From positions 1-64,000 of the IMG/VR virus record IMGVR_UViG_3300015261_000002: a stretch of DNA of 64,000 nt; one strand, given 5' to 3'. The notes under the pieces were generated by a model. It did no database searches and was not told the DNA's origin. It saw only the letters and a list, made by a program, of their open reading frames with translations. The position numbers were made by a program, and so were the translations under genes. Within the stretch, counting starts at the first letter, position 1. Each line of letters begins with the position of its first letter. Below, piece after piece: positions 1,819-63,272 of this stretch.

Positions 1819-2502
1819 ATGTCTGTCGACATCAGCAACTTTCTCATTGCCACACCGCTACCGGTCTCCATCACCAATCCGGTCGCCCTTGAAATCCCAG
1901 GCCTCGAAGCCCTGGAACGCTGTCCTGAAGTGATTCGCTTACTGGAGGATGGATCTCTTCAGATGTCTGCTTTAACGCTGGGAGCATCGAGTAAGAGCGT
2001 TAAGCGTACCCGCTGTGAATGGAAAGAGTCCGAGTACTGGTCTCTGGGTAGTGCGGACCGTCATTGGAGCCGCCAAGAAATGATCCTGGAAAAGGTCAAT
2101 GCTGCCCAAAAGGTGGTCATTGGTCAGATCCATGTCAAGAACGCTAACACCCCGCCTCTGAAGGTGTTCTGGAACCGGGGCAATATCACGGTAGGCTTCC
2201 GAGCCAGCTACGATAAACCCGATATCAAAAACTTCACTGTTCATGCAGGCGTTCCTCTGGGCGCCAAGTTCAAACTGAACATCGGGGTTACCCGAGCGGG
2301 TAAAGTGCAGATCAATGGTACTTGCAACGGGGTGGCATTCGAACCGTGCAATCTGCAAATGAACTACTCCTGGCAAAGACAGCTGCTGCAATTCCACGGC
2401 GGCGTCTACAACCAGGTTGATTACTCCGATGAAACCGCAGCCGATGATGGGTCGGTGTGCGTTATCAAAGCGCTGACTGTTTCACACAGTTCCGTCGAGT
2501 AG
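1819..2502 (+). CDS. Polysaccharide lyase family 7 (alginate-lyase-like)
   Basis: PL7 motifs RTRCEWKE (RxELR-like), VIGQIH and FHGGVYNQ (YFKAGxYxQ-like). Confidence 0.85.
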   Translation: MSVDISNFLIATPLPVSITNPVALEIPGLEALERCPEVIRLLEDGSLQMSALTLGASSKSVKRTRCEWKESEYWSLGSADRHWSRQEMILEKVNAAQKVVIGQIHVKNANTPPLKVFWNRGNITVGFRASYDKPDIKNFTVHAGVPLGAKFKLNIGVTRAGKVQINGTCNGVAFEPCNLQMNYSWQRQLLQFHGGVYNQVDYSDETAADDGSVCVIKALTVSHSSVE

Positions 2503-2543
2503 CAGCCATAACCCTGGAGCCTCCTTGCGGGGGCTCCAGGGTT
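2502..2543. terminator. Long stem-loop at a convergent junction, preceded by GCAGCCATA
   Basis: AACCCTGGAGCCTCC-TTGC-GGGGGCTCCAGGGTT, 15 bp with one G.T pair. Confidence 0.75.
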
Positions 2544-2550
2544 TAGGTGT

Positions 2551-5500
2551 TTACGCGCGTTTACGTTCTCGCAACATACGTTTAGCCCTTTCGAGTTTGG
2601 CGTCCTCGATAAGACTGTCCACGGTGAGGAGTTTCGCTGTTTCTGGAGGAAGCAGTTTGCTGAGCTTGTTGATCTCAGCTTCCAGACGCATCGCCAGGAT
2701 GTTGTCGTTGGTGTTCAACAGCTCATCCGTCAACTTCTGCACACGTTTCTTGATGTTGTCCATGAACGAGATAATGCTTGGATCAACTTCAGGAGCGCTC
2801 TTCTGCTTACCGGCGTCAAGGAGGTTACGCGTCTCCGACAACTGAATCCCGGTAGGAATCCCGTACATCGGTTTGTTTTGTCCCAACTTGATAAACCAGT
2901 ACGTCAGCAACCAGGCGATAACCAAGTCATCGTGCTGTTTACTGTCGTGGTCGATACGGTCTCCTTTCGTCTTGAGGTTGATCAACTCATCAGCCAGTCG
3001 ATCGTAGTTCAGCCCATACCCCGTTACCCCCACAGCTTCCTGAATTAAACCGTACAGGACTTCACGGGATTTAGCCGTGGTGTTAAATCCAAAGAACTGT
3101 TTGTACTTCAGGTAGAAGCTCTTACTGCGGTGAGCGAACTTGGTGTGCTGAACAGCCTCGTACTCCTTCGAATGGTTGACCGGGTCCTGGAAGATCTGGT
3201 TGTAGATCTTCGTGAACGGATCCATCCCTTTTGCCGGCAACATCACGAGGAGGTTATCGATCATGTGGTGAGCGTAGTTGCGTTCAATCACCAGCAGACT
3301 GTTTTCAAAGGTGGCCAGCATGTCCACAATGATCCCGGTTACATCATCCAGGAAAGCCAACTGATAACGTCCCACCCCAATCACCTTACCGGTTCGCATA
3401 CTGCGGATAATCAGCGTACAGGCGTCCTTGTTGATAGCCGATGAGGTATCCACCCCAATGAGGAAGAAGTCGTTATGGCTCTTCTTCGCCATCTCCAGCA
3501 GTTCTTGCTGCGTGACAAAGAAGTCTACAAACAGACCACTGTCACGATACTCCTTACTCCACACCTTATCCCGCTTCACGTTGTTGATCGCTTCACGGGT
3601 GATGTCGTCGAACACACGGTTCTCACCGTCTTCAACCCACATCAACAGCAAGTCGATCTTAGCCTTAGCCAAACTGAGGTTCAGGCTGTCAATCGTTTCA
3701 CGGACCCAGGCTTTGTCCTTGCCGAGTTGCAGGTAGTTATACACCAAGGCCACAGACGGTGACGTGGTCTTCTTCGGAGACGCTTTCAGCAATCGCATCT
3801 TCAGATGGCTTTCGCTGTAGGAGTCAAAGAACTTCTCACGCCACTCGGTCGACGTCATCAGCTTCTCAAACATGAACTCACCGCTTGGGTGAAGGGTCGT
3901 GTTTGGTGTCGTGATGTAACTGATCCCGTAAGGAATACCGCTGTCACGACAAATCTCCATCTCTGTCAGAGCAGAAGGAGAGCATCCGTTGATGATCGCC
4001 TCGATCCAGTTAATGTAACCTGGCTCGTCGTAGTTCGTGGTGCCTACCGTGAGACCCCGTCCAAGGTCACCTGCGGCGTCTTCACCCATCTGGGGTACCG
4101 AGATGGTCAGGGTGTTAACGTGCTCCTCCCCAAACGCTTTATACGTCAGGTAGTTACCCGCGTCCTTGTCTTTCCAGGTTGGGTTAACAAGGTACTTCGG
4201 CAAACAGGTTCGGATCTTTTTGATCGCGTCAATGAACTGAGCCCGGTTATCCGACTTCAGTGTCACAAGGTGAGACTTGTAGCCGCGCCCCATGATGTAC
4301 GTCAGCCAGAAAGCAATCACCTGTACCGATACCGTGTTGTGGGTGACCAGGAAGTCGTCAGTGACGTAGAGGTGTTCCTCGTTGTCGACTTCAATGCAGG
4401 TGCACGGTGCTTCACCGTAGTACTCGATCCGATCTACAAACAAACGGTTGTCGAATACAAACTCATCTTCAACGGTCTTGTACTTAAACAAAGCCATCGA
4501 AGCAGGAAGCGTAACCGTGAACTTACTGCCTTCCTTCAAAGCAGTGCCACCCAGTCCACGAGCGAGATACTGTACGTGACCGCCTACAAGCCTGCTGGAG
4601 GTCTTGTAGATGACACCCTCATCGCCGACTACTCCTTGGTCCAGAAACGCCTGTAACAGCAACAGGCGATCTTCCCAGGCCCCTTCCAGGTAGTCTACAG
4701 GCACCCCAAGCTCAGGATCGATAGAGATCTTCACATTCTCATCGGTCGAATGAATCTCACGACGATTACCCTTACAGACGAGTTCCAACCCTTCAGGCAG
4801 GTTCTCAACCAAGAAAGCATCGCAAGCATCCGACACCTTTTTGATCAACAGGTAACCACCAATCTGCTGAGCCCCGATCAAGGTCCCCATGACATACGGG
4901 TTGATCTTGAAGGTCTTTGCTTCTCCCTTCTCGGTCTCAATCAGTGGGAACTCAAGTTTAACCCCATCCTTGAGTTTCGTGATCATCTCGGCAGTCGTGT
5001 AGTCATCCCAGATGGGTTCGTCGTTAACCGTACGACCGTGGTCTGCCAGAGTCCACAGGTGCTCAGGCCCTGCGCTGACATAACGACCATCACTGGCATA
5101 AACACGGTACAGCCGTTTGATACCTTGAGCGTGGATACCGATAACCGTGGACTTCTTGCCGTAGCGATCGATAACCTCATCACCGGCTTGCAGATCCCCA
5201 ATCCGTCTCCAGGTCCCATCAGCCATGCGAACCTTGTCATTGTCATCCTGGTACTTGCCCTGTTGACGAGGCATGATCATGTACTGGGTGATGTGGTTCA
5301 GGTAGTTCCAGATAAAACTGATGTTCCCCCGATTCGCAAGGAACTGTCGGTCTGCCCGCAACTTACACACCTCACGGAGGAAGTACCAGAAGTTGGTCTC
5401 GCTCTCGTGCATGATCATGACTTTCTGTTCGTTTGTCAGATCGTCAGCGTAAGGGTCTACCCCGATAAGGGCCGGGTTGTTCAGTTGCAGCAGGAAGTTA

Positions 5501-5808
5501 AAGTTCTTAATCCCCTGTTGCCGAAAGATCTCAGCGGTCCGGATGAAACTGGTGTTACGGGTGGTGGTGTCAGGAATTGCACGATAACGAGCAAAGTCCT
5601 TTAGGAATCGAACGGTCTTGATCTTTGACAAACTGTCTTCATTGAAGTGAGCCATGATCAGCTCATCTTCGGTACGCTTCTCCCAGTCGACCCGGTTCTT
5701 ACGGTCGTCAATCAATTCACGTGGAAGGTTTTGTGCCCCAAGGTAATTCATGAGGTCTTTGGCAAACTTGAGCTGGCCCTCGTCTGCCGTATTCTCGGCT
5801 GTAGTCAT
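2551..5808 (-). CDS. terL: Terminase large subunit containing an intein
   Basis: After intein removal: Walker A PRQQGK|T, Walker B YDE, nuclease motif LIGVDTS. Position divergent from the sheath/tube genes matches phiKZ-like phages. ATG at 5808 preferred over GTG at 5826. Confidence 0.92.
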   Translation of the reverse strand: MTTAENTADEGQLKFAKDLMNYLGAQNLPRELIDDRKNRVDWEKRTEDELIMAHFNEDSLSKIKTVRFLKDFARYRAIPDTTTRNTSFIRTAEIFRQQGIKNFNFLLQLNNPALIGVDPYADDLTNEQKVMIMHESETNFWYFLREVCKLRADRQFLANRGNISFIWNYLNHITQYMIMPRQQGKYQDDNDKVRMADGTWRRIGDLQAGDEVIDRYGKKSTVIGIHAQGIKRLYRVYASDGRYVSAGPEHLWTLADHGRTVNDEPIWDDYTTAEMITKLKDGVKLEFPLIETEKGEAKTFKINPYVMGTLIGAQQIGGYLLIKKVSDACDAFLVENLPEGLELVCKGNRREIHSTDENVKISIDPELGVPVDYLEGAWEDRLLLLQAFLDQGVVGDEGVIYKTSSRLVGGHVQYLARGLGGTALKEGSKFTVTLPASMALFKYKTVEDEFVFDNRLFVDRIEYYGEAPCTCIEVDNEEHLYVTDDFLVTHNTVSVQVIAFWLTYIMGRGYKSHLVTLKSDNRAQFIDAIKKIRTCLPKYLVNPTWKDKDAGNYLTYKAFGEEHVNTLTISVPQMGEDAAGDLGRGLTVGTTNYDEPGYINWIEAIINGCSPSALTEMEICRDSGIPYGISYITTPNTTLHPSGEFMFEKLMTSTEWREKFFDSYSESHLKMRLLKASPKKTTSPSVALVYNYLQLGKDKAWVRETIDSLNLSLAKAKIDLLLMWVEDGENRVFDDITREAINNVKRDKVWSKEYRDSGLFVDFFVTQQELLEMAKKSHNDFFLIGVDTSSAINKDACTLIIRSMRTGKVIGVGRYQLAFLDDVTGIIVDMLATFENSLLVIERNYAHHMIDNLLVMLPAKGMDPFTKIYNQIFQDPVNHSKEYEAVQHTKFAHRSKSFYLKYKQFFGFNTTAKSREVLYGLIQEAVGVTGYGLNYDRLADELINLKTKGDRIDHDSKQHDDLVIAWLLTYWFIKLGQNKPMYGIPTGIQLSETRNLLDAGKQKSAPEVDPSIISFMDNIKKRVQKLTDELLNTNDNILAMRLEAEINKLSKLLPPETAKLLTVDSLIEDAKLERAKRMLRERKRA
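4336..5253 (-). mobile_element. 306-aa class-3-type intein (Tyr1) with degenerate LAGLIDADG remnants
   Basis: YQDDNDKVRMADG...IGDL...EHLW...CTCIEVD...VTHN|T, inserted between K and T of Walker A. Confidence 0.9.
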
Positions 5809-5848
5809 GATAGGTTCCCATTGCACATCAAAAAATAAAAGATACTCG

Positions 5849-5887
5849 CAAAAATAAAGCAGGCCCAGGGTGTTACCCCCAGGCCTG
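5849..5887 (-). terminator. Putative intrinsic terminator
   Basis: Imperfect GC hairpin followed on the minus strand by TTTATTTTT. Confidence 0.5.
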
Positions 5888-5897
5888 TTGTAGCGGG

Positions 5898-6128
5898 TTA
5901 CTTCAGGATCGACGCAGGGACACCAACTTCGGGATCCACTGGTTCTGCTTCTTCTTTCAGACGCTCATGAGTCGTCACAGCGCGGTTGTCGTAGATCAGC
6001 ACTTCACGGCTTTCACCGTTTTGCAGTGTGAACTGTTCGAACAGGCTACCGTCGGTGATGTTGAACACCTGGACCAGCACTTCTTTCGTATCCGCACAAT
6101 GAGCGGCAACCTTAACTTGCGATGTCAT
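5898..6128 (-). CDS. Small hypothetical protein (76 aa)
   Basis: RBS GGAG; fills the gap in a minus-strand operon. Confidence 0.75.
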   Translation of the reverse strand: MTSQVKVAAHCADTKEVLVQVFNITDGSLFEQFTLQNGESREVLIYDNRAVTTHERLKEEAEPVDPEVGVPASILK

Positions 6129-6160
6129 ACATTTCTCCGATAGGGATTACACGTATAACA

Positions 6161-7882
6161 TTAAGGCGCCAACTCCACGGTTACACCGGTCATGCCCAGT
6201 TGCAACTCAACGCCAGAGACGTCTTTGTTGATCCAGTTGACGTACCACGTCTTGCCCTTTTGCATGGCAATGGTGATCGCATTGGTCTGGTTCCAGGCTG
6301 TAATCGGGAACCGCCATTTACGGCCATCTTCATGCATCAGGTCGAAGTGAGTCGCCACCGGCGCCTTGTCTTCGTTGAAGATGTCGTAGCTTGGGTAGAT
6401 CGACCAGTACATCACGTTCAGCCACTCGTCGATGTGATCCTGACCGTTAGCAATGGTAAACGTGGTGTTAGCCCCGTTGTTCTTCGCCACGACATTCAAC
6501 GCCGTGTAGGCTGGCTTGCCGTAGGAGTAGTTGACACTCCAACGCTTGCCTGGACCGTTTACATCTTTCAACAACACAATCTCGGTGTGCTGAATGAACG
6601 GCACACTTTCATACGTCTGAGCGACGTCTTTGAGGTTGATGTTGAAGATGAGTGCCTGCGACAGACCATACGACGACGGTTTGTAGACCGGGCTCTTGTC
6701 GTTATAGGTAACCACCGCAGTAACGTCGGTAAACGTCTTGCGATCGAGGTCGTACAGGAAGTGCTGCAAACGGTAACCGTTGAGCGACGCATCCCATTGA
6801 GGGTAGGTGAAGATCCGTGGGCTGTAAGCACCCTTGGCTGCACCGGCCTCGAAGGTGTAGGTGTGTCGGGCAAAGTTCGGGTTACCCGGCTGAGCGACGT
6901 CATGCTGCTCGTTCGGGGCCAGTTTCTTGATCAACACCACGTCAGCACTTTGACCTGGGAACTTCGGACGGTATTCGTTAACGCCATGCAGCGTGTACTC
7001 ACCACCGTTGACCGGACCAGGTTCAGAAGTCGAACCGTCAGAGTAATGCGTAACCGCTCGCAGTTCGACAGACGACAGTTGAACGTTGACCGGAATGATC
7101 AGACGATCGCGATCGCTCACATGAGTGAACCATGGCGACAGCAGTTCCACACCGGTGACGTACTTGACGCCGATGTTGTGGTCTTTCATGTACGCCGAAT
7201 GCTGAACCATCAAAGGCTGAGCAGGCGGGATGAACGTTTCGCCATCGAAGAACACCAGCCAAGCACGCGTGCCATCCGGCAGAGCGAGTTCGTTCTTCGT
7301 TACGCTGAACGCACCGGTCGTCATGATCGACTTGTTCGTGTACTCGTTGATCAAGGCCAACTTAACCGGAACGGTCTTGCTGATCATGTTCATCGATTGG
7401 TCGTACTGAGCCGAGATGATGTTACCCTCGACAGCGGCATTACCCAGGTATACGAATGCATGGGTAGCACCCGGACGCATGATCGTCGCATCCACACGCG
7501 CCACGTTAGGGCGTACGGAGTAGTCGATCGACAGCAGAGCTTCACCGGCCATTGGACCACCACGGAGACCGTAGATGTAGTCCTGGTCGGTGGTGTTACC
7601 TTCGTCAACGTTGGTCAGGCGCCAAGGCACCAGGGTCGACTTCAGGGTAGCCTGCCAGTCCACTTTGGCAACGAGGTAAATCATGCCGTTAGGAGGATCA
7701 AACACCAGCTCCCCTTCCTGGGGCACAACGTACTTGGTCAGATCACTTGGTGGATGGACGTCTGGATCATAAATGTTCCAGAGGTAGTGGAAGTTTTTGC
7801 GTTCACCGGTGTTGAGGGGATGGATGTTCGTCCCCGCAACCGCAGCAATCGCGTTAGACAACGGCGACTGGTCAAACAGCAT
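6161..7882 (-). CDS. Virion structural protein (phiKZ gp26-like by synteny)
   Basis: 573-aa beta-rich ORF next to the terminase in the conserved block. Confidence 0.7.
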   Translation of the reverse strand: MLFDQSPLSNAIAAVAGTNIHPLNTGERKNFHYLWNIYDPDVHPPSDLTKYVVPQEGELVFDPPNGMIYLVAKVDWQATLKSTLVPWRLTNVDEGNTTDQDYIYGLRGGPMAGEALLSIDYSVRPNVARVDATIMRPGATHAFVYLGNAAVEGNIISAQYDQSMNMISKTVPVKLALINEYTNKSIMTTGAFSVTKNELALPDGTRAWLVFFDGETFIPPAQPLMVQHSAYMKDHNIGVKYVTGVELLSPWFTHVSDRDRLIIPVNVQLSSVELRAVTHYSDGSTSEPGPVNGGEYTLHGVNEYRPKFPGQSADVVLIKKLAPNEQHDVAQPGNPNFARHTYTFEAGAAKGAYSPRIFTYPQWDASLNGYRLQHFLYDLDRKTFTDVTAVVTYNDKSPVYKPSSYGLSQALIFNINLKDVAQTYESVPFIQHTEIVLLKDVNGPGKRWSVNYSYGKPAYTALNVVAKNNGANTTFTIANGQDHIDEWLNVMYWSIYPSYDIFNEDKAPVATHFDLMHEDGRKWRFPITAWNQTNAITIAMQKGKTWYVNWINKDVSGVELQLGMTGVTVELAP

Positions 7883-10544: not shown

Positions 10545-10549
10545 GATGT

Positions 10550-11428: not shown

Positions 11429-11444
11429 GAGGTTACCTCTAAAA

Positions 11445-11457
11445 ATAACATGTTATG
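11445..11457 (+). promoter_or_regulatory. Candidate late promoter (ATGTTATG) within a 12-bp palindrome ATAACATGTTAT
   Basis: TATG is the phiKZ late-promoter core. The same ATGTTATG occurs at 52432. Confidence 0.4.
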
Positions 11458-11546
11458 TGCCAGTGGTATAACACACTGTACGGCCCAGAAATGGCTAGCA
11501 TACGATTGTTTTAGGACCCACAAACAGGACATCAACGAGGTTCTCC

Positions 11547-14641: not shown

Positions 14642-14687
14642 TATAACCCCTCCTGCCCCGCAAAGGGCAGGAGGGGTTATAGCTGCT
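14642..14687. terminator. 17-bp stem-loop at a convergent junction (TATAACC family)
   Basis: TATAACCCCTCCTGCCC-CGCAAA-GGGCAGGAGGGGTTATA. Confidence 0.8.
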
Positions 14688-14689
14688 AC

Positions 14690-16402: not shown

Positions 16403-16443
16403 AACTTGACTCCTTTGATAAAGGGGAATATTCCTAATCCCCC

Positions 16444-16479
16444 AAAAAATAAAAGACAGAGGATTTCTCCTCTGTCTTT
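16444..16479 (-). terminator. Intrinsic terminator
   Basis: AAAGACAGAGGA/TCCTCTGTCTTT stem with a minus-strand T-tract. Confidence 0.75.
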
Positions 16480-16487
16480 CGTCCTGG

Positions 16488-17459: not shown

Positions 17460-17499
17460 TATAACCTCTCCTAGCCTGTAAGGGCTAGGAGAGGTTATA
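17460..17499. terminator. 17-bp stem-loop (TATAACC family)
   Basis: TATAACCTCTCCTAGCC-TGTAAG-GGCTAGGAGAGGTTATA. Confidence 0.75.
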
Positions 17500-23377: not shown

Positions 23378-23414
23378 GATCCACCCCCAGTAAAAAATGA
23401 AAATGCGTAATAGT

Positions 23415-23455
23415 GGATGACTAAGGATCTCTCCCTAGTCATCCTTTATCGCTGC
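23415..23455 (-). terminator. Stem-loop preceded on the minus strand by GCAGCGATA
   Basis: GGATGACTA...TAGTCATCC inverted repeat after the stop codon at 23463. Confidence 0.6.
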
Positions 23456-25130: not shown

Positions 25131-25166
25131 TATAACCCCTACCAGGTGTGAGCCTGGTAGGGGTTA
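25131..25166. terminator. 14-bp stem-loop (TATAACC family)
   Basis: TAACCCCTACCAGG-TGTGAG-CCTGGTAGGGGTTA. Confidence 0.7.
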
Positions 25167-45698: not shown

Positions 45699-45741
45699 CT
45701 ATAACCCCTCCTACCCCGCAAAGGGTAGGAGGGGTTATAGC
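45699..45741. terminator. 18-bp stem-loop at a convergent junction, near-copy of 14642-14683
   Basis: CTATAACCCCTCCTACCC-CGCAAA-GGGTAGGAGGGGTTATAG. Confidence 0.8.
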
Positions 45742-48563: not shown

Positions 48564-48573
48564 AAACATTTCA

Positions 48574-48619
48574 CAGCATAAAGGCTAGAGTGGAGGCACT
48601 GCCTCCACTCTAGTTAGCC
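48574..48619. terminator. Stem-loop at a convergent junction, preceded by CAGCATA
   Basis: CTAGAGTGGAGGC-ACT-GCCTCCACTCTAG. Confidence 0.7.
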
Positions 48620-53341: not shown

Positions 53342-53344
53342 CAA

Positions 53345-53392
53345 GCAGCCATAAACCTAACTACAGGAGCCCACACAGGCTCCTGTAGTTAG
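53345..53392. terminator. 15-bp stem-loop at a convergent junction, preceded by GCAGCCATA
   Basis: CTAACTACAGGAGCC-CACACA-GGCTCCTGTAGTTAG. Confidence 0.78.
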
Positions 53393-53400
53393 TAAGCGTT

Positions 53401-54918: not shown

Positions 54919-54977
54919 TCGATGTGCCCTTAAGAGGTGTAGTTACACATTAATGAGCTCCCGGGTGAAGATTCACA

Positions 54978-55430
54978 TCAAGGACGTCGAAGAGCTTTAT
55001 CGAGCAGCACTTTGTTGTTTTTCCGCAAGAGGTCGTTCTCGTCCAGAGTCTGGATAAGCTGTAAACGCAACCAGTGGTTTTGTTCAAACAGTCGAGCGTT
55101 CGTCTTGAGGAACAGGATATTTTCTTGCTTTAAGGTCGCGTTCTGACCGGCAAGCATGTCGTTGATGCGAATGAACCCTTTGATAGGTCCACCGTTGTCC
55201 CCATCGAACAAAAGGTTTACTTTAGAAATACCCTCCTCCATGTCCGAGAGTTCAGTACGCATATTGACGTTTGCAATCAAAAGACTGGTCACGAGAAACA
55301 TGAGTACCGTCACCAAGAAGATCGAGGTCTTCAGCGCCGATGTTAATTGCTCTTCAAGTGTTTCACCCTTTGTCAACGAGAGGACAAATTCTATAGATCT
55401 GTTGGTTAGCTCTCTAAAGACCGCTAACAT
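54978..55430 (-). CDS. Membrane protein with one TM helix and a coiled coil
   Basis: SIFLVTVLMFLVTSLLIA followed by heptad repeats. Confidence 0.7.
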   Translation of the reverse strand: MLAVFRELTNRSIEFVLSLTKGETLEEQLTSALKTSIFLVTVLMFLVTSLLIANVNMRTELSDMEEGISKVNLLFDGDNGGPIKGFIRINDMLAGQNATLKQENILFLKTNARLFEQNHWLRLQLIQTLDENDLLRKNNKVLLDKALRRP

Positions 55431-55462
55431 GGGACCATTCCTTACTGAAGAGGTGAGAGTTT

Positions 55463-56806
55463 ATGAGCGTTACAATGTTTTTGTCTTTCGGCAGTATTTC
55501 ACCACTTTATAACAACAATCCCGAGAATGCCGCCCCACTGGGAGAGCTCTCTAACAAATCCAGGAGCTATCAGAAAGATCCTGGTACCTTTACCCGTACT
55601 GATGTTGCTACGGTTACTGAACTGGTTAACTTCCTCAGCATTACCGATGAAGTTGAAGTCAAGATGCCTACCAGCATTGCGCTGGTACAGATCGGTATCA
55701 GTGACTGGTTGTACGCACAGGCGAAGTTGGGCAACATTACCAGCAGTCGTCCAAACACGCTAGCTCTTTTGAAGGCAAACTTTTCCAACAACATCGATAT
55801 TACTGATGTTGGTGAAATGGTTACCGACAATGCCATCTGGATGCCAAGTTTCGTACAAGGCGCCCATCTGGTAAACGGCGAGCGTCAAGAGTTCTACCTG
55901 TGGTTTGCTGACGCTTACTTCCAGGATCAATTCCCCCGGGTTAAGTTCACCGCAGTGCATCCGCTTCCTCTTGAGGAAATGGACTTCCTGATGAACGCCA
56001 ACTACAAGCAGATTGAAGCCCGCTTGTTGATGGAAACCCCAAAGGTTATCGAAGACCGCCTGAAGACCCTGAACAGCGACAGTGCATGGCCCTATACCGA
56101 CCGGGATGTGTTGGAGTTCCAGATCATGGACCTCATTAACACCCCAAGCTTCAACGTCGGTAGCTGGACCTACATCTGGTGGGGTAACGGCAAAGACGCC
56201 GAAGATCAACTCTTCGATCAACTCCAAAAGGAGATTCTCGACAATTCCGAGTACCCACGTTCGCGTTGGGAAGAGAAGATCCCGGATCTGTTCAACCCGC
56301 TCGAGTTCTACGTCATCCCAAGCTTCGACCGCTATGGTCTGTTGAACAAGGCCAACGGTGCTAAGCAGTTCTCCCCTATCACCGATCGTGAAACCATGAT
56401 GGTGTTGGTGGACAAGTACCTGACGCCGAACATGACGAGTGACCACGTCATAAAATCCATGCAGATGGTTCCGTTCATGTACAAGTCGCTCAACTGTGCC
56501 TTTGTGGCGAAGTTGAATAACCGTGCAGGCATGGAAAAGATCACAGCGCTGTTCCCGGATTACTCGCTGATTTCTCCACTCGATCCAGACTTCGGTCTGA
56601 TCTCCGATGTAACGATGGACTTCATTCGTCGTATGGAAGATCTGCTGGCTGCTGCTGAAACGGTTACCCCGATCAGTCTGCCGCCTCAGGGTATCACCCG
56701 AGTAGAACGGTTCGGCAAGGTTTACGTGGCTCGTCGTATTGGCAAGGTGAAGATCCTGGTCTTGACGCGTTATCAAATGCTGCAAGACGGTGTAGTGAGT
56801 AACTAA
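55463..56806 (+). CDS. Virion structural protein (phiKZ gp157-like by synteny)
   Basis: RBS GAGG; LGELS and IPDLF..EFYVIP motifs. Confidence 0.65.
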   Translation: MSVTMFLSFGSISPLYNNNPENAAPLGELSNKSRSYQKDPGTFTRTDVATVTELVNFLSITDEVEVKMPTSIALVQIGISDWLYAQAKLGNITSSRPNTLALLKANFSNNIDITDVGEMVTDNAIWMPSFVQGAHLVNGERQEFYLWFADAYFQDQFPRVKFTAVHPLPLEEMDFLMNANYKQIEARLLMETPKVIEDRLKTLNSDSAWPYTDRDVLEFQIMDLINTPSFNVGSWTYIWWGNGKDAEDQLFDQLQKEILDNSEYPRSRWEEKIPDLFNPLEFYVIPSFDRYGLLNKANGAKQFSPITDRETMMVLVDKYLTPNMTSDHVIKSMQMVPFMYKSLNCAFVAKLNNRAGMEKITALFPDYSLISPLDPDFGLISDVTMDFIRRMEDLLAAAETVTPISLPPQGITRVERFGKVYVARRIGKVKILVLTRYQMLQDGVVSN

Positions 56807-56808
56807 CC

Positions 56809-57549
56809 ATGGCAGATCAAAACCTGATCCCGGCTATTAATGCCGCGGGTCGCTTCGAAGCGGCAGCGCCTTTCAATGCTGTCGTTAACCAGGATGTCTA
56901 CTACACAGTAGAGGCCACCCGAACCATCCACGAGATGGAAGGTGCCAAGCTGGATATGTACAGCCTGGTCTTTCAACCGGTGGGGGTTTCACCCGAAGAC
57001 TTCCCAGTTGTGCTGAAACGAGCCAAAGATGCCGGAGCTATTATCTGCGCGTTGCTGGACCGTAACGGTACTCCGGTTTATGTACCCTCCACCTACCTGA
57101 CGTCGTTCCCGATGGTAGATGGTGTGTCGTATGAGCGTATGTGCATGATCGCTGATCTGGGTCCTGTGCCGCCGTCCATGCGTGAAGCAATGCAACAGGT
57201 ACTGGATCACACCAACCAGTACATCGCTGCCACCATGGGTATCACCTCTACCGTAAGACTGGGGACGATTCCAACGGTCGGGTATGTCAGTCAGAACCAA
57301 GCCGATGCTTACGAGAACACGCGTAAGGAAAACATCACCGACAGCAGTAATGATGTCGCCAAGGTAAGAGCACTGACTCAACAGGCCGCTTCGAAGGATG
57401 CATACATTTCGAAACTGGAGGCCGACCTGATCGGTACGAAGAACACCTTGACCACCACCCAGGCAAAACTTACCGCCACGCAAGCAGCTTTGGCCAGTGC
57501 AAACGAGGCGTTGGTAGCGGCTGGGTTACCCGCGATACCAGTACCCTGA
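56809..57549 (+). CDS. Conserved protein with a C-terminal coiled-coil extension
   Basis: Operonic; YVPSTYL..FP and DLGP motifs. Confidence 0.7.
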   Translation: MADQNLIPAINAAGRFEAAAPFNAVVNQDVYYTVEATRTIHEMEGAKLDMYSLVFQPVGVSPEDFPVVLKRAKDAGAIICALLDRNGTPVYVPSTYLTSFPMVDGVSYERMCMIADLGPVPPSMREAMQQVLDHTNQYIAATMGITSTVRLGTIPTVGYVSQNQADAYENTRKENITDSSNDVAKVRALTQQAASKDAYISKLEADLIGTKNTLTTTQAKLTATQAALASANEALVAAGLPAIPVP

Positions 57550-57550
57550 A

Positions 57551-57594
57551 GCAGCCATAACGCCTCTAACAGCCCTTGTGGGGGCTGTTAGAGG
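57551..57594. terminator. 13-bp stem-loop at a convergent junction, preceded by GCAGCCATA
   Basis: CCTCTAACAGCCC-TTGTGG-GGGCTGTTAGAGG. Confidence 0.75.
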
Positions 57595-57604
57595 TAGTCG
57601 TGGT

Positions 57605-59332
57605 TTACACCTGACGAATCGATCCAACTTCAATGCCGTCATCGCCTTCAACTACCTGACGGTAGGTGTACGGTTTGATGTACGGGCACTGAACGTCGAG
57701 CAGATAGCCATAGACCGCATCGACAAAGCTTTGCGTGTAGCTGTTCAGGATCTGCTTCTTGAAGTCCAGCTCTTCGTTTTCGATCGGAGTCGGGCGACCT
57801 TCTTCGTGATACTCGTAAACGACCCACTCGTTCAGATCGAGACCGATGTTGCCGCCGTGAGCGGTCAGCTTCGTGATCACTTCGTTCGCCACTTCTTCCA
57901 TGTACTTGACGCCGTACGCTGGAGAGAAACCGTAGACACGGTTCAGGAAGTGACTCGACGCCATCAGTTGTTCTTTGAGGTTGGTGTCAAAGATCTCCTG
58001 AATCATCGGATGCGGGTTGATCATGTCGCGGTGCTTCTGGAACATGCGATTGATCTGGCGCGTGCCGTGGCTGATGCGCTTGACGTTGACCTGAACGGAC
58101 TTGCTGTACGAAGACCACTCGAAGATGTTGATCGGTTCATCACCGAGAACGATCTCCCCGGATTCAGGCAGACGAGGGTAAACGCGATCCAGCGCAACGT
58201 TCATCTCTTTCAGACCATTGACACCCTTGAAGCTCAGGTAGAGGTCGTGGTCTTTTTCCTTGACGAGGTCGGCCAGTTTCAGAGCGATACGGTTGAGTTC
58301 AGACAGACGACCACGGAGGTCTTCGTTCATGCGCTCGCAGACTTCTTTGACGAGGGTAAAGTCGCCATCTACGAGTTCATCGATCGGCTCTTTGCTGAAC
58401 GAGAGCGGGAAGAAGGACAGCGGCAACTCTATAGGCGCCTGGGTTACATTGAGGTTGAAACCCCGCTCGGAGTGACGACGTTGGTGGGTCCACTTCATCG
58501 GGTCTTCGCCTTCCATCTCGTAGAAGAAGACCGGAATGTCCTTGCTCCGAACAACAAACGAGCGCGACACTTCATCCACCTGGAAACGGAACCAGGTCAC
58601 TTCCTGATCGCCATCCATGCCGAGGTAACGGAAGATACGCAGATAGACAGGATACGTCAGGTCGATGCGGGGGTCGTGTGCCACTACGCTGAACGGCACA
58701 TCGGTAACCGCCATCATGAAGAAACGGATCAACGCGGCGGTAGTCTTTGGAAGACTGTCGTCACGGTTCGGGAAGATCTGCGGCAGCGAGTGCATTGCGT
58801 TGGCGAGCATGCCGGCGATGTTGGCTTCCTTGGTGCTACTGGCAAAGCTTTCCACCGGACCAACTTTAATCGTGGCGTCATCGGTACCTTCTTTTGGTGT
58901 GGTCATGTCCTTCAGAAGCTCACCGAAGCTTTCAGGGGAGTGCGTTTCAACAAGAACAGCATCACCCGCTTGATGCAGTACCTGAGCCTCGCCGTCGGCA
59001 ATAACGAGTTCACCTTTTTCATCACGTTCGTGAACTGGCTGTTCGTACGCCAATGGAACACGATCACCGGCTTCGTTGGTGGTCTCAACAGGCAGCTCCA
59101 TAACTTCTGCCAGTTTGTCCATGTGATTGTTCCAGTCGGTCAGCTGTACCGGGATACCTTCTGGCATCTTTTCGATGTAACCTTCTTTGGGAGCGTTAGC
59201 CCGAGTCTCTTCGACCAGCGTATGCCATTCTTCGTCAGTCCCAACAAAACCTTTTGCCACCGCATTTTCGTAGGAAGCGTCAGGGTGGACGTAACCAATG
59301 TCACCGCCTACATCTTTCTTTTCATCGCTCAT
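57605..59332 (-). CDS. Hypothetical protein (575 aa) with an acidic N-terminal region
   Basis: Long ORF with strong codon bias and RBS GAGGG. Confidence 0.8.
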   Translation of the reverse strand: MSDEKKDVGGDIGYVHPDASYENAVAKGFVGTDEEWHTLVEETRANAPKEGYIEKMPEGIPVQLTDWNNHMDKLAEVMELPVETTNEAGDRVPLAYEQPVHERDEKGELVIADGEAQVLHQAGDAVLVETHSPESFGELLKDMTTPKEGTDDATIKVGPVESFASSTKEANIAGMLANAMHSLPQIFPNRDDSLPKTTAALIRFFMMAVTDVPFSVVAHDPRIDLTYPVYLRIFRYLGMDGDQEVTWFRFQVDEVSRSFVVRSKDIPVFFYEMEGEDPMKWTHQRRHSERGFNLNVTQAPIELPLSFFPLSFSKEPIDELVDGDFTLVKEVCERMNEDLRGRLSELNRIALKLADLVKEKDHDLYLSFKGVNGLKEMNVALDRVYPRLPESGEIVLGDEPINIFEWSSYSKSVQVNVKRISHGTRQINRMFQKHRDMINPHPMIQEIFDTNLKEQLMASSHFLNRVYGFSPAYGVKYMEEVANEVITKLTAHGGNIGLDLNEWVVYEYHEEGRPTPIENEELDFKKQILNSYTQSFVDAVYGYLLDVQCPYIKPYTYRQVVEGDDGIEVGSIRQV

Positions 59333-59373
59333 CTTTTTCCCTCTTTTTAAATGGGTGCCATCGGAGGCAGTTC

Positions 59374-62217
59374 ATGCTTAACTTATTTTCAGTTGCTGTA
59401 AGGCAAACTGGGGTCTTTGTACATATCACAGGAGTTTCATACGGCGCCCTGTCACGAGATATCGAGAAGTTCTACAGCAGTTCATTGCTCACCAAATGGC
59501 AGATCCGCCGAGAGACCTGGGATTCCATCAAGGTTCATAACTTCTTTCTGGTAGAGCTGCACATCATCCTGGGTGAACTGCTAAAGGTTCGTAACCTCCG
59601 TAGTCGTCGTAGAGAGTTGGCAGAATTAAAACACCTGCTTGAAACGGAAACCTGGATCAAAGATACTGTCAATCCTGCTGGTAAGCGGTTCGACTTCAAA
59701 AAGCTGGATCGCTTCAACGTGGTTCCTTTCCCGAAACAGCGTGAGTTTCTGGAACAGTACCCCATCATCAAACAGAGCTATCACCTTAAAGGATTGTTGC
59801 TCGATGCCGCAGTGGGTAGCGGTAAGGCGATGCCACTGAACACGCAAGTCAAGGTGCCGGGTGGCTGGAAGCGTCTTGGCGACCTTAAGATAGGTGACCA
59901 GGTGATAGGACCCAAGGGTAACGTCGCTAACGTCACAGGTTACTTCCCTCAAGGTGTAACCGAGAGTTTCCGTTTTACCTTTGAAGACGGACGTACTGCT
60001 GACTCTCACCCATTGCATTTGTGGGAAGTGGCGGAGTCAGGATTTGACGGCAGTGGTAATGCGGTGGGTCAGACCCATGTGACCACGACAAAGGATATCG
60101 TGAATCACTTCGACCAGTTCAGTTACCACATCCCATTGGTAGGTGATGTCGGTGACAGTATTGAACCGTCAGCACTCGACCTGGAGCAGATCGCCACCGG
60201 GCTGCTGACTGCTGGTATACATATGGCCGACCCAGTGACAGAACTTTCCTACGTGGATCGTCGTCAGATCGCCAAGCACATGATCGAAAAGTCGGGCTGT
60301 CATTTGTCTGAGGTTGGGGTGTCAGTAATCACCGATAATGCCTACGGCGCCACAAACTTCCAGAAGCTCATGTGGAGCCTTGGGGGCGTCGCTAACCTCG
60401 AAACCTTTGGTGACCTGTTCAAGGTTAGCTTTAAGCACCGAGACATCGCCTGGCTCGTCGACAGCCTTGTATTGGAGTCCCTCGGTAACATCCTCGACGT
60501 TACCCAGTACATGAACCTGAAGTTGAAGCTGGTCGCCATCCAGCAGCAGCCGCAGATCGAAACCGCCTGCATCAGTATTGACAGTGAAGACTGCCTTTAC
60601 ATCGTTGACAACTGGATCGTCACGCACAACACCGTAACCTCGTTGATGTGGTCGATGCTTGTCAGTGATAACAAATGCATCATCGTCTGCCCTCTGAACA
60701 TCGTTGAAGAAGTTTGGCTGGGCAACATGAGGAAGCGCCTCAAAGAGATGCCGCGGGTATGGACGTCTACGTCAGGTCGTTTGTTAACGGACGATTACGA
60801 CTACTACATCATCCACTACGAATTCCTCCAGGGGAATCACTACGACCACATGCGTAAATGGTTTAACGAAGCCATGAAGCGCAACAAGAAGAAGTTCAGC
60901 TTGATCGTCGATGAGTCTCACAACTTTAACGACATCAAGTCTAAGCAGACTCGCCGGTTAGTAGAGTTGGCGGACGATGGGTTGTTCGAAGACTCCCTAC
61001 CGATGTCTGGGACACCGCTGAAGGCACTTGGGAGTGAGATCTACCCCATCACCTGCCTTATCGACAAACACTTCGACAAGCCGGCCAGAGAGTTCTTCAT
61101 GGCGAGCTATGGACGTAACCGTCCCGCGCTAATCTCGTTGTTGGCCAACCGTATCGGGCGTGGGAAGTTCTCCATTCCTGAACTGGCTGGTATGGGCGAT
61201 CCTCCTCCGTTTGAGATCATCAAGGTTAAAATCCCCGACGGGGATAAGTACACCCTGGAATCCATTCGCCTGGAGATGCAGAACTACATTGTGGAACGGT
61301 TCGCGTTCTACAGTAAGCACATGGCGCAGTTCATCGTGTTCTATAACGATGTAATTCAGCGCTATGAGTATTCGATCGCTAAACAACCCAAAGAACTTGC
61401 TGACCTGAAACGCTACAAGGCTATCGTTAACCGCTTCCGTACCCAGGGGTATAACAACTTCACGGACTCGGTCGACAGCGCCTTCTGCAAGGCTGTAGAG
61501 GAGGATATTGAACGTGGTCTAAAAGGTCCTGAGCTGGCTGAGTTCCGTAATGTGAAATCGGCCGTTAAGTACCTGGCGTTGAAGATCCGTGGTGAGGCGT
61601 TGGGTAATGTCTTGAGTCGTGCTCGTATCAATGCGATTAAAGACTTGATCGCGCACGCTGAACTGCCTAAGTACATCAACGACGTAGAGAAGAAAACCTT
61701 GATTTTTACCTCTTACGTCGAAGCCTTGAAACTCTCGGTAGACTACTTGGCTGCCCAGGGCTTTAAGCCTGTATCGGTGTACGGTGAGAACAGCAGTGAA
61801 CGTGACGCCACCGTCAAGCTGTTTGCCGAAGATCCAAAGATCAACCCGCTGACAGCCACGTACAACAGTCTGAAAGAAGGTTACCCGATGTTGATGGCTA
61901 ACCAGATCATTGGACTGGACTCCCCATTCAGGGAACATGAACTGCGACAAGTAAAAGGAAGGATCTGGCGCACCGGTCAGGATGCCGCCCAGTGTTTCTT
62001 CCGTATGCTGGATATGGATACCGGAGATAAGCTCAACATCACCACGCGCAGTCTGGACATCCTGGCCTGGAGTAAAGAACAGGTAGATGCCTTGATGGGT
62101 CGCATGGAAGGTCACGTGGCGTTTGCTAACGTAACCGGTGAGGAGTGTCTCGATATCAGCGAAGAATTAATCGGTCGTCCGTTGAAGATGACTAACAGTG
62201 TTCTCTCACTCTTTTAA
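59374..62217 (+). CDS. SF2 (SNF2-like) helicase containing an intein
   Basis: GSGK|T, VDESH, MSGTP and GRIWRTGQ motifs; RBS GGAGG before MLNLFS. Confidence 0.88.
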   Translation: MLNLFSVAVRQTGVFVHITGVSYGALSRDIEKFYSSSLLTKWQIRRETWDSIKVHNFFLVELHIILGELLKVRNLRSRRRELAELKHLLETETWIKDTVNPAGKRFDFKKLDRFNVVPFPKQREFLEQYPIIKQSYHLKGLLLDAAVGSGKAMPLNTQVKVPGGWKRLGDLKIGDQVIGPKGNVANVTGYFPQGVTESFRFTFEDGRTADSHPLHLWEVAESGFDGSGNAVGQTHVTTTKDIVNHFDQFSYHIPLVGDVGDSIEPSALDLEQIATGLLTAGIHMADPVTELSYVDRRQIAKHMIEKSGCHLSEVGVSVITDNAYGATNFQKLMWSLGGVANLETFGDLFKVSFKHRDIAWLVDSLVLESLGNILDVTQYMNLKLKLVAIQQQPQIETACISIDSEDCLYIVDNWIVTHNTVTSLMWSMLVSDNKCIIVCPLNIVEEVWLGNMRKRLKEMPRVWTSTSGRLLTDDYDYYIIHYEFLQGNHYDHMRKWFNEAMKRNKKKFSLIVDESHNFNDIKSKQTRRLVELADDGLFEDSLPMSGTPLKALGSEIYPITCLIDKHFDKPAREFFMASYGRNRPALISLLANRIGRGKFSIPELAGMGDPPPFEIIKVKIPDGDKYTLESIRLEMQNYIVERFAFYSKHMAQFIVFYNDVIQRYEYSIAKQPKELADLKRYKAIVNRFRTQGYNNFTDSVDSAFCKAVEEDIERGLKGPELAEFRNVKSAVKYLALKIRGEALGNVLSRARINAIKDLIAHAELPKYINDVEKKTLIFTSYVEALKLSVDYLAAQGFKPVSVYGENSSERDATVKLFAEDPKINPLTATYNSLKEGYPMLMANQIIGLDSPFREHELRQVKGRIWRTGQDAAQCFFRMLDMDTGDKLNITTRSLDILAWSKEQVDALMGRMEGHVAFANVTGEECLDISEELIGRPLKMTNSVLSLF
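59827..60630 (+). mobile_element. 268-aa class-3-type intein (Ala1) with a decayed endonuclease region
   Basis: AMPLNTQV..PGGWKRLGDL...LHLW...TACISID...VTHN|T, inserted in Walker A. Confidence 0.9.
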
Positions 62218-62230
62218 GGGAAGATCCGTT

Positions 62231-63229
62231 ATGTATGAAGAAGTTCCAGAAGTAAGTCACGTTGAAGCTGTCATGGACGGCATGCTGGACAGCCTGAGCG
62301 GTAATGAGAGCCTCGATCTCACTCAGGCCCAGCGTTACCTTGCCGGTGTGCTTGAATCGGCTGACATGGTGCGTTGGAGCGTTCAGGGTACTGAAGGTTT
62401 CTTCAGTTCGATTGGCGATGGTCTCAAAGCTGCATGGGACTACGTCATGAAGATGTTCAAATCCGTCTACGACTTCTTCTTTGGCAAGAAGAACAAGGAA
62501 GACTCTGATGCAGCCAAGTCAAGCGTGAAAGACGCCAGCTCGGCTATCAAGGAGGTTGAGTCTCCTGAGGTGACCGAACAGAACGCACAGGCTGTCCTCA
62601 AACAAGTCGAAAAGAAAATCGACAAACTTCCAGAGTCCGCAAAGAAAAAGGAACTCAAGAAGAAGGTTGAAAATGCGAAGGCTGATCCAGCCAAAGCAAA
62701 AGCAGCTGCGCCTGGCCTGATCAAGGAAGTCTACGACGAGAGCATGATTGACCTGCCGCGGATGAACGCTGTGGCTAAAAAGTTCAACCAGCTCTATACC
62801 GACCTCCTGAAACGTAAAGACGAATACAAGGCCCATGTCGGTGCTGGTGACCGTCAAGTGTTAGGCCACGCCCTCGAGCAATTCCTGAACGGGTTTACCG
62901 GTCTCAAGGAACCGCGTAAAGGTCTGGCTGAATCGAAGGCGTGGCTCACCTGGGCTGGTCGTTGCCTGGAAGCCACCGATAACAGCCTGCTGACCATCAA
63001 GGCCATGAAGTCCGAGCACGAACATGCCATCAAGGATGTTCAAGCGAAGATCGACGGGCTTCAGAAGAGCCAACATACCAAGCAGGAGCTGGTGGCAGAA
63101 ATTGCTGACCTCAAGCGTGTGATGGCCACCATCGTGACGGTTATCAAGATCGCAGATGAAACGCGGGATTGCATCCGTCTGATGGCGAAGGATATCGAAT
63201 CCTGCTGCGTGAAAACGAAAGAAAATTAA
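62231..63229 (+). CDS. Probable internal head protein (propeptide-type)
   Basis: G-N-E and G-T-E candidate protease sites, then an amphipathic helix (AAWDYVMKMFKSVYDFF) and coiled coil. Confidence 0.65.
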   Translation: MYEEVPEVSHVEAVMDGMLDSLSGNESLDLTQAQRYLAGVLESADMVRWSVQGTEGFFSSIGDGLKAAWDYVMKMFKSVYDFFFGKKNKEDSDAAKSSVKDASSAIKEVESPEVTEQNAQAVLKQVEKKIDKLPESAKKKELKKKVENAKADPAKAKAAAPGLIKEVYDESMIDLPRMNAVAKKFNQLYTDLLKRKDEYKAHVGAGDRQVLGHALEQFLNGFTGLKEPRKGLAESKAWLTWAGRCLEATDNSLLTIKAMKSEHEHAIKDVQAKIDGLQKSQHTKQELVAEIADLKRVMATIVTVIKIADETRDCIRLMAKDIESCCVKTKEN

Positions 63230-63230
63230 A

Positions 63231-63272
63231 AGCCATAGTACCCTACCTAACCCACATGGGTTAGGTAGGGTA
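63231..63272. terminator. 15-bp stem-loop at a convergent junction, preceded by AGCCATA
   Basis: TACCCTACCTAACCC-ACAT-GGGTTAGGTAGGGTA. Confidence 0.78.

What the first reader, a model, noticed from the sequence alone, without database searches (positions are those of the whole stretch)
2502..63272. Long hairpins without U-tracts at all seven convergent junctions, most with a flanking GCAGCNATA motif
Seen: each +/- junction (2510, 14642, 45699, 48585, 53357, 57563, 63239) has a 13-18 bp stem and no poly-T on either side. A shared motif precedes the stem: GCAGCCATA (2502, 53345, 57551), AGCCATA (63231), CAGCATA (48574), and on the minus strand GCAGCTATA (14687) and GCAGCGATA (23455). Several co-directional gaps instead have shorter hairpins with TTTATTTTT tails. 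Inference: a second signal class, such as a phage-RNAP- or factor-dependent bidirectional terminator, an RNA-processing or stability site, or a DNA cruciform bound by a phage protein.
Basis: partly seen in the sequence, partly recalled or inferred. Interest (0 to 1): 0.68.

Follow-up and report, generated by a model that had tools for sequence, protein, structure and literature searches.

The report
Two-way phiKZ-type transcription terminators
The long hairpins between genes that face each other are this giant phage's own two-way transcription stop signals. They are the same kind already mapped in phage phiKZ, and the "GCAGCCATAA" motif is the stop signal's tail read from the opposite strand.

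Summary
All seven convergent junctions in the window carry a 13-18 bp hairpin without a canonical U-tract. GCAGCNATA occurs 8 times in the window against 0.8 expected.

Genome-wide (224.7 kb jumbo phage with phiKZ-type RNA polymerases), 16-17 of 18 convergent junctions have such hairpins. There are 23 perfect stems of 13 bp or more against 0.13 expected.

The motif does not functionally precede the stem. It is the reverse complement of a 3' box, GTTATRGCTGCTT, that follows the hairpin in the direction of transcription. All 41 intergenic copies in four related genomes have this orientation, including every co-directional gap.

phiKZ has the same layout at 19 of 20 convergent junctions: C-rich arm, G-rich arm, then TTATG-YY-GT on both sides. 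That is the published terminator consensus, mapped by long-read RNA sequencing, with bidirectional cases at convergent genes.

In relatives the stems change by paired substitutions, the loops vary or flip, and the box stays.

Verdict: these are bidirectional phiKZ-type terminators with a lineage-specific, GC-richer tail, so a new member of a known kind. No RNA data exist for this phage, so termination is inferred. How a hairpin plus this box stops the polymerase is still unexplained.

The parts
2500..2543 (-). Junction 1. Hairpin 2510-2543 (15 bp, one T.G pair, loop of 4). The 3' box TATGGCTGC lies on the minus strand at 2502-2510. It serves the terminase-like gene 2551-5808 (minus). The TAG stop of the plus gene 1819-2502 abuts the box.
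14642..14688 (+). Junction 2. Perfect 17-bp hairpin 14642-14681. The box TATAGCTGC lies on the plus strand at 14678-14686 and overlaps the last four stem bases. It serves the virion-protein gene 13732-14634 (plus).
45699..45740 (.). Junction 3. Perfect 18-bp hairpin. TTATAG forms the outer stem on both strands, and there is no full box.
48572..48613 (-). Junction 4. Perfect 14-bp hairpin 48585-48613. On the minus strand the tail TTTATGCTGTG (48572-48582) is the phiKZ form of the box.
53343..53392 (-). Junction 5. Perfect 15-bp hairpin 53357-53392. The box TATGGCTGC lies on the minus strand at 53345-53353. It serves the ribonuclease gene 53401-54918 (minus). The box is kept in seven IMG/VR relatives, although two of them have an entirely different stem.
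57549..57594 (-). Junction 6. Perfect 13-bp hairpin 57563-57594. The box lies on the minus strand at 57551-57559. It serves gene 57605-59332 (minus). Relative G001 has one compensated pair.
63231..63272 (-). Junction 7. Perfect 16-bp hairpin 63239-63272. A half-box, CTATGGCT, lies on the minus strand at 63231-63238 and is followed by a T-rich stretch.
17460..17499 (-). The same kind of palindrome (17 bp, TATAAC...GTTATA) in a co-directional minus gap. A promoter-like pair (TTAAGATACA, then CTATATTAC) follows it.
23410..23455 (.). Hairpin 23410-23449 (13 bp core) in a co-directional minus gap. On the transcribed minus strand the tail is CTATTACGCATTTT.
25133..25166 (-). Perfect 14-bp palindrome (TAAC...GTTA) in a co-directional minus gap.
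16443..16480 (-). Example of the T-tailed class: a 12-13 bp hairpin followed by TTTATTTTTTG. Others lie at 5829-5887, 15881-15924, 20870-20900 and 46866-46906 (all minus), and at 43453-43490 (plus).

Best explanation
These are factor-independent, hairpin-type terminators for the phage's own multisubunit RNA polymerases. They are of the kind mapped in phiKZ and 201phi2-1, here built as perfect palindromes so that one element stops transcription from both sides of a convergent gene pair.

Proposed mechanism. The RNA made from either strand reads C-rich arm, loop, G-rich arm, at -27 to -38 kcal/mol. It is followed at 0-9 nt by a tail that begins TTAT. In this lineage the tail is either TTTATTTTTTG or the box (G)TTATRGCTGCTT. 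The T-rich tail is found mostly in co-directional gaps. The box is found mostly at convergent junctions and replaces the T-run there. Read from the other strand, the box is GCAGCYATAA just before the stem, and its end (TAG or TAA) often serves as the stop codon of the opposing gene.

Shown here:
- the hairpins and the box are far beyond chance
- the orientation of the box relative to genes
- paired substitutions in stems and retention of the box in relatives
- the same architecture in phiKZ

Inferred, not shown:
- RNA 3' ends actually form here in this phage
- the weak UUAU part of the RNA-DNA hybrid, or recognition of the box by the polymerase, replaces a U-tract
For: (1) The genome is a chimallivirus-type jumbo phage.
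- RNAP beta-like subunits lie at 29414-33787, 33792-35408 and 49806-50486.
- A PhuZ tubulin is present.
- The closest cultured relatives are RisingSun (67% aa) and EL (61% aa).
- Sigma-70-like promoters are not enriched.

(2) 16-17 of 18 convergent junctions genome-wide hold a perfect 13-18 bp hairpin. Stems of 13 bp or more number 23 against 0.13 expected.

(3) GCAGC[CT]ATAA has 11 copies. All are intergenic and all lie 0-6 nt from a hairpin. Five IMG/VR relatives have 5-12 copies each, against 0-1 for the control.

(4) Orientation. In G000, G001, G003 and G005, all 41 intergenic copies of TATRGCTGC have the gene on their 5' side co-oriented. This includes about six independent co-directional gaps, where the order is always stop codon, hairpin, box.

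(5) Co-directional hairpins fold better on the transcribed strand (31 against 10, mean 2.7 kcal/mol), so they act as RNA. Convergent hairpins are symmetric on the two strands, as a two-way RNA signal must be.

(6) Orthologous junctions. 42 of 461 compared pairs changed on both sides and stayed Watson-Crick. Only 4 of 30 loops are unchanged. At 71% aa distance the stem sequence is replaced, yet the box is kept at 6 sites.

(7) phiKZ, analysed the same way, has a hairpin at 19 of 20 convergent junctions. TAT[GA] lies at the stem end on 32 of 38 sides against 15% background. The tails read TTATGCTGTTAA, TTATGCCGT or ATTATGTCGT. This is the published consensus ...GGGRRGG-BY-TTAT-KYYGT from 61 mapped terminators. 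That study also found six bidirectional terminators between convergent genes (PMC10914365).

(8) 201phi2-1 has 132 mapped 3' ends, 15 of them bidirectional, and eight terminators were validated in vivo (PMC11512511).

(9) The box consensus in this clade is gTTATRGCTGCtt. It is the phiKZ tail with one extra G and higher GC.
Against: - No RNA run holds this phage, so no 3' end has been mapped here.
- About 13 of 32 directional sides at convergent hairpins have neither a box nor a T-run. The tail therefore cannot be strictly required, or those sides terminate poorly.
- In the co-directional copies a T6 run follows the box by 4-7 nt, which leaves open where the transcript ends.
- The exact box is not enriched in RisingSun, EL or phiKZ. 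Homology of the tails rests on TTATG and on position, not on full identity.
- Perfect palindromes can also be kept perfect by intrastrand template switching, and the flipped loops show that this happens. Paired substitutions are therefore weaker evidence of selection than they look.
- The comparisons among relatives are not phylogenetically independent.
Confidence: 0.72

Rival explanations
1. The box is a late promoter, or a terminator-promoter composite. It contains TATG, which is the phiKZ late promoter core with G as the start site. On this view the polymerase restarts just after the hairpin.
For: - The phiKZ nvRNAP needs TATG, and sequence downstream of it matters (PMC4666361).
- In the four co-directional copies the box lies 70-100 nt upstream of the next gene.
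Against: - About two thirds of copies (27 of 41) point into the 3' end of an opposing gene.
- A third of copies read TATA rather than TATG, whereas each of the four positions is needed in phiKZ.
- In phiKZ both sides of 19 convergent junctions carry the tail, yet only four antisense RNAs with a defined start were found.
- The tested late promoter upstream of phiKZ gene 119 has no hairpin before its TATG.
Confidence: 0.08
2. The hairpins mainly protect or define mRNA 3' ends after the fact, as a stability or processing site. The box would be a nuclease or RNA-binding-protein site, and the polymerase would stop elsewhere.
For: - Very stable stems (-27 to -38 kcal/mol) would block 3' exonucleases.
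- The box is conserved as sequence.
- A phage ribonuclease gene lies next to one site.
Against: - With gaps of only 50-60 nt and opposing genes, polymerases that did not stop would run antisense through the neighbouring gene at every junction.
- In phiKZ the same elements are the 3' ends of primary transcripts, and similar 201phi2-1 elements terminate in a reporter without phage proteins.
- This rival is partly compatible with the main explanation, because terminator hairpins also stabilise RNA.
Confidence: 0.12
3. A DNA-level element: a cruciform or palindrome bound by a phage protein, or a site used in replication, recombination or packaging.
For: - The arms are perfectly complementary.
- Loops flip to their reverse complement between relatives (8 of 30), which shows that the DNA hairpin forms at least during replication.
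Against: - The elements sit strictly at gene ends and never inside genes.
- The box is oriented relative to gene direction.
- The co-directional members of the same family use G.U pairs on the transcribed strand, which is an RNA property.
- Stem sequences are not conserved, so there is no fixed protein site apart from the box.
Confidence: 0.05
4. Selfish or neutral repeated palindromes (REP- or MITE-like) that accumulate in the only free space, with no role of their own.
For: - The hairpins at 14642 and 45699 are nearly identical.
- Arm words such as CTACTCCTACTCCC recur in this genome and in RisingSun.
Against: - Most stems differ in sequence.
- Occupancy of convergent junctions is 16-17 of 18 here, 19 of 20 in RisingSun and 19 of 20 in phiKZ.
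- The hairpin persists at orthologous junctions while its sequence turns over.
Confidence: 0.03

Closest known systems
phiKZ conserved intrinsic terminator motif and its bidirectional terminators (Putzeys et al. 2024, PMC10914365)
   Same: - C-rich 5' arm, short loop, G-rich 3' arm, then a tail beginning TTAT(G).
- Placed after stop codons.
- One shared element between convergent genes, with the tail on both strands, so that ...CATAA precedes the stem on the other strand.
- The phage has the same kind of RNA polymerases.
   Different: - Stems here are 13-18 bp, against 8-11 bp in phiKZ.
- The tail is GTTATRGCTGCTT rather than TTATG-YY-GT and is less T-rich. This genome is 51.6% GC and phiKZ is 36.8% GC.
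- Usually only one side carries the full box.
- 3' ends are mapped in phiKZ but not here.
201phi2-1 terminators (PMC11512511)
   Same: 132 mapped 3' ends, 15 of them bidirectional. Its motif A is said to resemble the phiKZ terminator motif. Combined motifs give elongated stems. Eight terminators were active in vivo.
   Different: I did not analyse its sequence here. Its authors link long stems to resistance to antitermination, which is untested for this phage.
Canonical bacterial intrinsic (Rho-independent) terminators, including bidirectional ones at convergent genes (own knowledge: Ju et al. 2019, Nat Microbiol)
   Same: A GC-rich hairpin directly after the gene. A single hairpin shared by convergent genes.
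   Different: There is no 7-9 nt U-tract abutting the stem on 13 of 14 sides in the window. A conserved non-U box stands in its place.
RisingSun (the nearest cultured relative I analysed; EL is also close but its junctions were not examined)
   Same: RisingSun has a perfect hairpin of 9 bp or more at 19 of 20 convergent junctions (median stem 13 bp), with similar arm words and TTAT tails.
   Different: GCAGCYATAA is absent from RisingSun, and TATRGCYGS is not enriched in RisingSun or EL. In RisingSun the tails are TTAT followed by T-rich sequence.

Membership tests
phiKZ-type conserved terminator | Stem-loop with a C-rich 5' arm and a G-rich 3' arm | tested here: met
   15 of 17 convergent hairpins read pyrimidine/C-rich arm, then G-rich arm, on both strands.
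phiKZ-type conserved terminator | TTAT(K-YY-GT) region directly after the stem | tested here: met
   TAT[GA] lies at the stem end on 22 of 32 sides, against 3.8% background. The clade consensus is gTTATRGCTGCtt. The tail is similar to the phiKZ tail but not identical.
phiKZ-type conserved terminator | Lies downstream of stop codons, and is shared by convergent genes when bidirectional | tested here: met
   16-17 of 18 convergent junctions have the hairpin. Stop codons lie 5-21 nt from the stems.
phiKZ-type conserved terminator | Host phage encodes phiKZ-type multisubunit RNA polymerases | tested here: met
   RNAP beta-like families at three window genes, and a PhuZ tubulin.
phiKZ-type conserved terminator | Primary transcript 3' ends map to the element | not testable with these tools
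   No RNA run holds this sequence. The only full holder is a rhizosphere metagenome.
Canonical intrinsic terminator | U-tract immediately after the stem | tested here: not met
   Only one of 14 sides (48585, minus strand) passes a test of at least 5 T in 8 bases with the whole stem.
phiKZ late promoter | TATG with G as the start site, placed ahead of a gene in sense orientation | tested here: not met
   A third of boxes read TATA, and 27 of 41 face the end of an opposing gene. Start sites could not be tested.
Rfam RNA families | Match at the family's gathering score | tested here: not met
   No match anywhere in the 64 kb window.
Repeated mobile palindromes (REP/MITE-like) | Copies share sequence, not only shape | tested here: not met
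   Stems differ in sequence, except the pair 14642 and 45699. The hairpin persists at orthologous sites while its sequence is replaced.

The most novel reading that the evidence does not exclude
The box may be an active stop signal read by the phage polymerase, rather than a weak-hybrid stand-in for a U-tract. It begins with TATG/TATA. In phiKZ, nvRNAP needs those four letters at late promoters. If its promoter-recognition subunit also reads them, a promoter-like element met during elongation could pause the enzyme just as the hairpin forms. That would be termination without a U-tract, assisted by a promoter element, in a multisubunit RNA polymerase.

The idea would explain three things:
- the tail is conserved as sequence from phiKZ to this soil phage
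- the tail tolerates high GC
- the tail keeps a near-fixed place after stems of any sequence
Probability: 0.12. Interest if true: 0.7.

Novelty: new member of a known kind. Interest (0 to 1): 0.3.

Why it matters
The result gives a clean annotation rule for this uncultivated clade of nucleus-forming jumbo phages: operon ends are hairpin plus TTAT tail, and the element is two-way at convergent genes.

It also shows that the phiKZ terminator architecture reaches well beyond Pseudomonas phages and survives a 15-point rise in GC content.

It isolates a compact, conserved, non-U tail (GTTATRGCTGCTT). This tail is a good substrate for asking how phiKZ-type polymerases terminate, which published work describes but does not explain.

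The elements are also candidate strong, short, bidirectional insulators for synthetic biology.

Tried and rejected
- Public RNA data. One search found only DNA holders: a rhizosphere metagenome that is probably the source, one roughly 95% relative and some small shares. I therefore did not use read laying.
- Near-identical DNA search in cultured phages gave only a 36-nt match.
- Rfam gave nothing in the window.
- Supplementary tables of the phiKZ study are not held, so mapped 3' coordinates could not be matched to the phiKZ palindromes.
- Link between tail type and time of expression. Genes ahead of the box include terminase, virion proteins, an internal head protein, a ribonuclease and PhuZ. 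Promoter-like motifs show no pattern with tail type. No association was found.
- The idea that the motif works ahead of the stem on the same strand as the stop codon. I rejected this because in co-directional gaps the motif lies on the antisense strand.
- The idea that the phiKZ late promoter P119L follows a hairpin. It does not.
- No covariance model was built. Stems vary in length and sequence, and pattern counts with shuffles answered the enrichment question.
- The large protein searches, structure prediction and complex prediction were not needed.


Full report
**What the window is.** The window is the first 64 kb of a single 224,747-bp contig with 51.6% GC. It encodes several RNA polymerase beta-like subunits, a tail sheath, a terminase-like protein and virion proteins. 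The genome also has a PhuZ tubulin. The nearest cultured phages at protein level are Erwinia phage RisingSun (67%) and Pseudomonas phage EL (61%). DNA-level similarity is limited to a 36-nt match. The only full holder among public runs is a rhizosphere metagenome, and no RNA run holds the sequence. It is therefore an uncultivated phiKZ-type (nucleus-forming) jumbo phage that should transcribe with its own polymerases. Sigma-70-like promoters are, if anything, fewer than in shuffles.

**Checking the observation.**
- My gene calls (221 genes, 93% coding) give seven +/- junctions in the window. Each holds one hairpin of 13-18 bp. Six are perfect, and the one at 2510 has one T.G pair.
- A scan for canonical terminators needs at least 5 T in 8 bases right after the stem. 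It catches only one of the fourteen sides as a whole hairpin.
- GCAGCNATA occurs 8 times against 0.81 expected. Five copies touch hairpins. Three copies inside genes look like chance.
- The shorter T-tailed hairpins in co-directional gaps are real.
One addition is that three co-directional gaps (17460, 23410, 25133) carry the same long palindromes.

**Whole genome.**
- 16-17 of 18 convergent junctions have a perfect 13-18 bp hairpin.
- Perfect stems of 13 bp or more number 23, against 0.13 in simulations.
- The strict motif GCAGC[CT]ATAA has 11 copies. All are intergenic and all lie 0-6 nt from a hairpin.
- Five related IMG/VR genomes each hold 5-12 copies, against 0-1 for a reversed control.

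**Which way the motif faces.** In four co-directional gaps of minus-strand genes, the motif lies on the plus strand. On the transcribed strand the order is therefore stop codon, hairpin, then YTATRGCTGCTA, followed a few bases later by a T6 run. I called genes in three fully fetched relatives. All 41 intergenic copies of TATRGCTGC in the four genomes have the gene on their 5' side co-oriented. The gene on the 3' side is opposed in 27 copies and co-oriented in the rest. About six of the co-directional sites are independent, and none shows the reverse order. So the functional reading is hairpin, then box. The box ends in CTA or TTA, which read from the other strand is TAG or TAA. This explains why the opposing gene's stop codon so often abuts it. 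The weak copy at 23455 (N = G) is the one case that lies on the antisense strand of a co-directional gap.

**RNA or DNA.** I folded each gap on both strands. Co-directional hairpins are more stable on the transcribed strand in 31 cases against 10 (mean 2.7 kcal/mol). This is the signature of G.U pairs and hence of an RNA-level role. Convergent hairpins are very stable (-27 to -38 kcal/mol) and equal on the two strands. A signal that must fold in transcripts from both directions should look like this, because any G.U pair on one strand is an A.C mismatch on the other.

**Relatives.**
- At the ribonuclease junction (53341/53401), five relatives keep the stem and vary the loop. Two distant relatives (71% aa) have a wholly different, equally perfect stem and the same box after it.
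- Across orthologous convergent junctions, 42 of 461 compared pairs changed on both sides and stayed Watson-Crick. Only 4 of 30 loops are identical. Eight of 30 loops are the exact reverse complement of the reference loop.
- The box is kept at six orthologous sites in the distant genome G005, and at some junctions it changes sides.
- Flipped loops show that the DNA palindromes undergo template switching, which can also keep arms perfect. The paired changes are therefore supportive evidence of selection, not proof. The comparisons are also not independent.

**Comparison with what is known.**
- Long-read mapping of phiKZ transcripts found 133 termination regions. 61 share a stem-loop followed by a TTAT region, with consensus BCCYCCCC-HWWD-GGGRRGG-BY-TTAT-KYYGT. 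Six were bidirectional terminators between convergent genes (PMC10914365).
- 201phi2-1 has 132 mapped 3' ends, 15 of them bidirectional. Its main motif resembles the phiKZ terminator motif, and eight terminators were active in a reporter (PMC11512511).
- I fetched phiKZ and ran the same analysis. 19 of 20 convergent junctions have a hairpin. TAT[GA] lies at the stem end on 32 of 38 sides (background 15%). The tails read TTATGCTGTTAA, TTATGCCGT or ATTATGTCGT. On the other strand the stem is therefore preceded by ...TAA-CAGCATAA.
- RisingSun shows the same hairpins with TTAT tails at 19 of 20 junctions.
- In this clade the tail consensus is gTTATRGCTGCtt. The exact box is not enriched in RisingSun, EL or phiKZ.
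- The element is therefore a member of the phiKZ terminator family, with a lineage-specific, GC-richer tail and longer stems. The extra stem length comes partly from ATAA pairing with TTAT when both strands carry the tail, as at 14642, 45699, 17460 and 25133.

**Mechanism.**
- Most likely: the nascent hairpin forms while the hybrid holds UUAU followed by GGCUGC, and the phage polymerase releases.
- The T-rich tail TTTATTTTTTG is the commoner alternative on the majority strand. The box is preferred where an opposing gene lies close: 9-10 of about 32-35 convergent sides, against 3-4 of 51 co-directional sides.
- About 13 convergent sides have neither tail, so the hairpin with TTAT in its outer stem may be enough, or those sides may leak.
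- The tail contains TATG, the phiKZ late promoter core (PMC4666361). I do not think it is a promoter. A third of copies read TATA. Most copies point into the end of an opposing gene. phiKZ shows only four antisense RNAs with a defined start despite 38 such tails. The tested promoter of phiKZ gene 119 has no hairpin before it.
- The coincidence does leave a more novel reading open: promoter-element-assisted pausing and termination.

**Limits.**
- No transcript ends exist for this phage. Read laying was not used because no RNA run was on record.
- Gene calls are my own heuristic.
- The supplementary coordinates of the phiKZ study were not available.

Noticed in passing
window 14659-14664 and 45717-45722; genome junctions 136700, 145584, 177328: Hairpin loops flip to their exact reverse complement between close relatives (for example cgcaaa and tttgcg) in 8 of 30 comparisons. 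This is a sign of template switching within the palindromes.
   Followed up: partly
window 14642-14681 and 45699-45740: Two hairpins at unrelated junctions are almost the same sequence: one pair differs and the loop is identical. This suggests copying or conversion between terminators.
   Followed up: no
window 17427-17458 (minus), also 23998-24006 and 47985-47993; genome 64310, 111070, 120270, 148090: A promoter-like pair: TTAAGATACA, then about 12 nt, then CTATATTAC. The same TATATTAC core stands upstream of several phiKZ genes in the stretch read. It is probably the early (virion polymerase) promoter class.
   Followed up: partly
genome 66728, 88031, 95204, 97923, 109173, 153407, 203788, 220679 (outside the window): A second promoter-like word, AAACCTACATTAT, lies 20-60 nt upstream of minus-strand genes.
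   Followed up: no
window 23400-13413 region: 23400-23413 (minus); genome 137066 and 148142: A third tail type follows hairpins: CTATTACGCATTTT. It is conserved at the orthologous junction in two relatives.
   Followed up: no
window 5829-5839, 15881-15892, 16443-16453, 20870-20880, 46866-46877 (all minus): The T-tail of co-directional terminators is a fixed word, TTTATTTTTT(T)G. It is often separated from the stem by 4-10 nt and lies about 20 nt ahead of the next start codon. It is more constrained than a plain U-tract needs to be.
   Followed up: partly
window 2551-5808 (minus): The terminase-like ORF is 1085 aa, but family matches cover only residues 12-392. The rest is unassigned.
   Followed up: no
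window 1-20000 and 44001-64000: Sigma-70-like promoter matches are fewer than in shuffles (8 against 14.6, and 11 against 15.4). This fits transcription that does not depend on the host polymerase.
   Followed up: no
genome 222344-222970 (outside the window): A 625-nt divergent gap near the contig end holds an AT-rich palindrome and GC-rich alternating runs. It may be an origin or terminal region.
   Followed up: no
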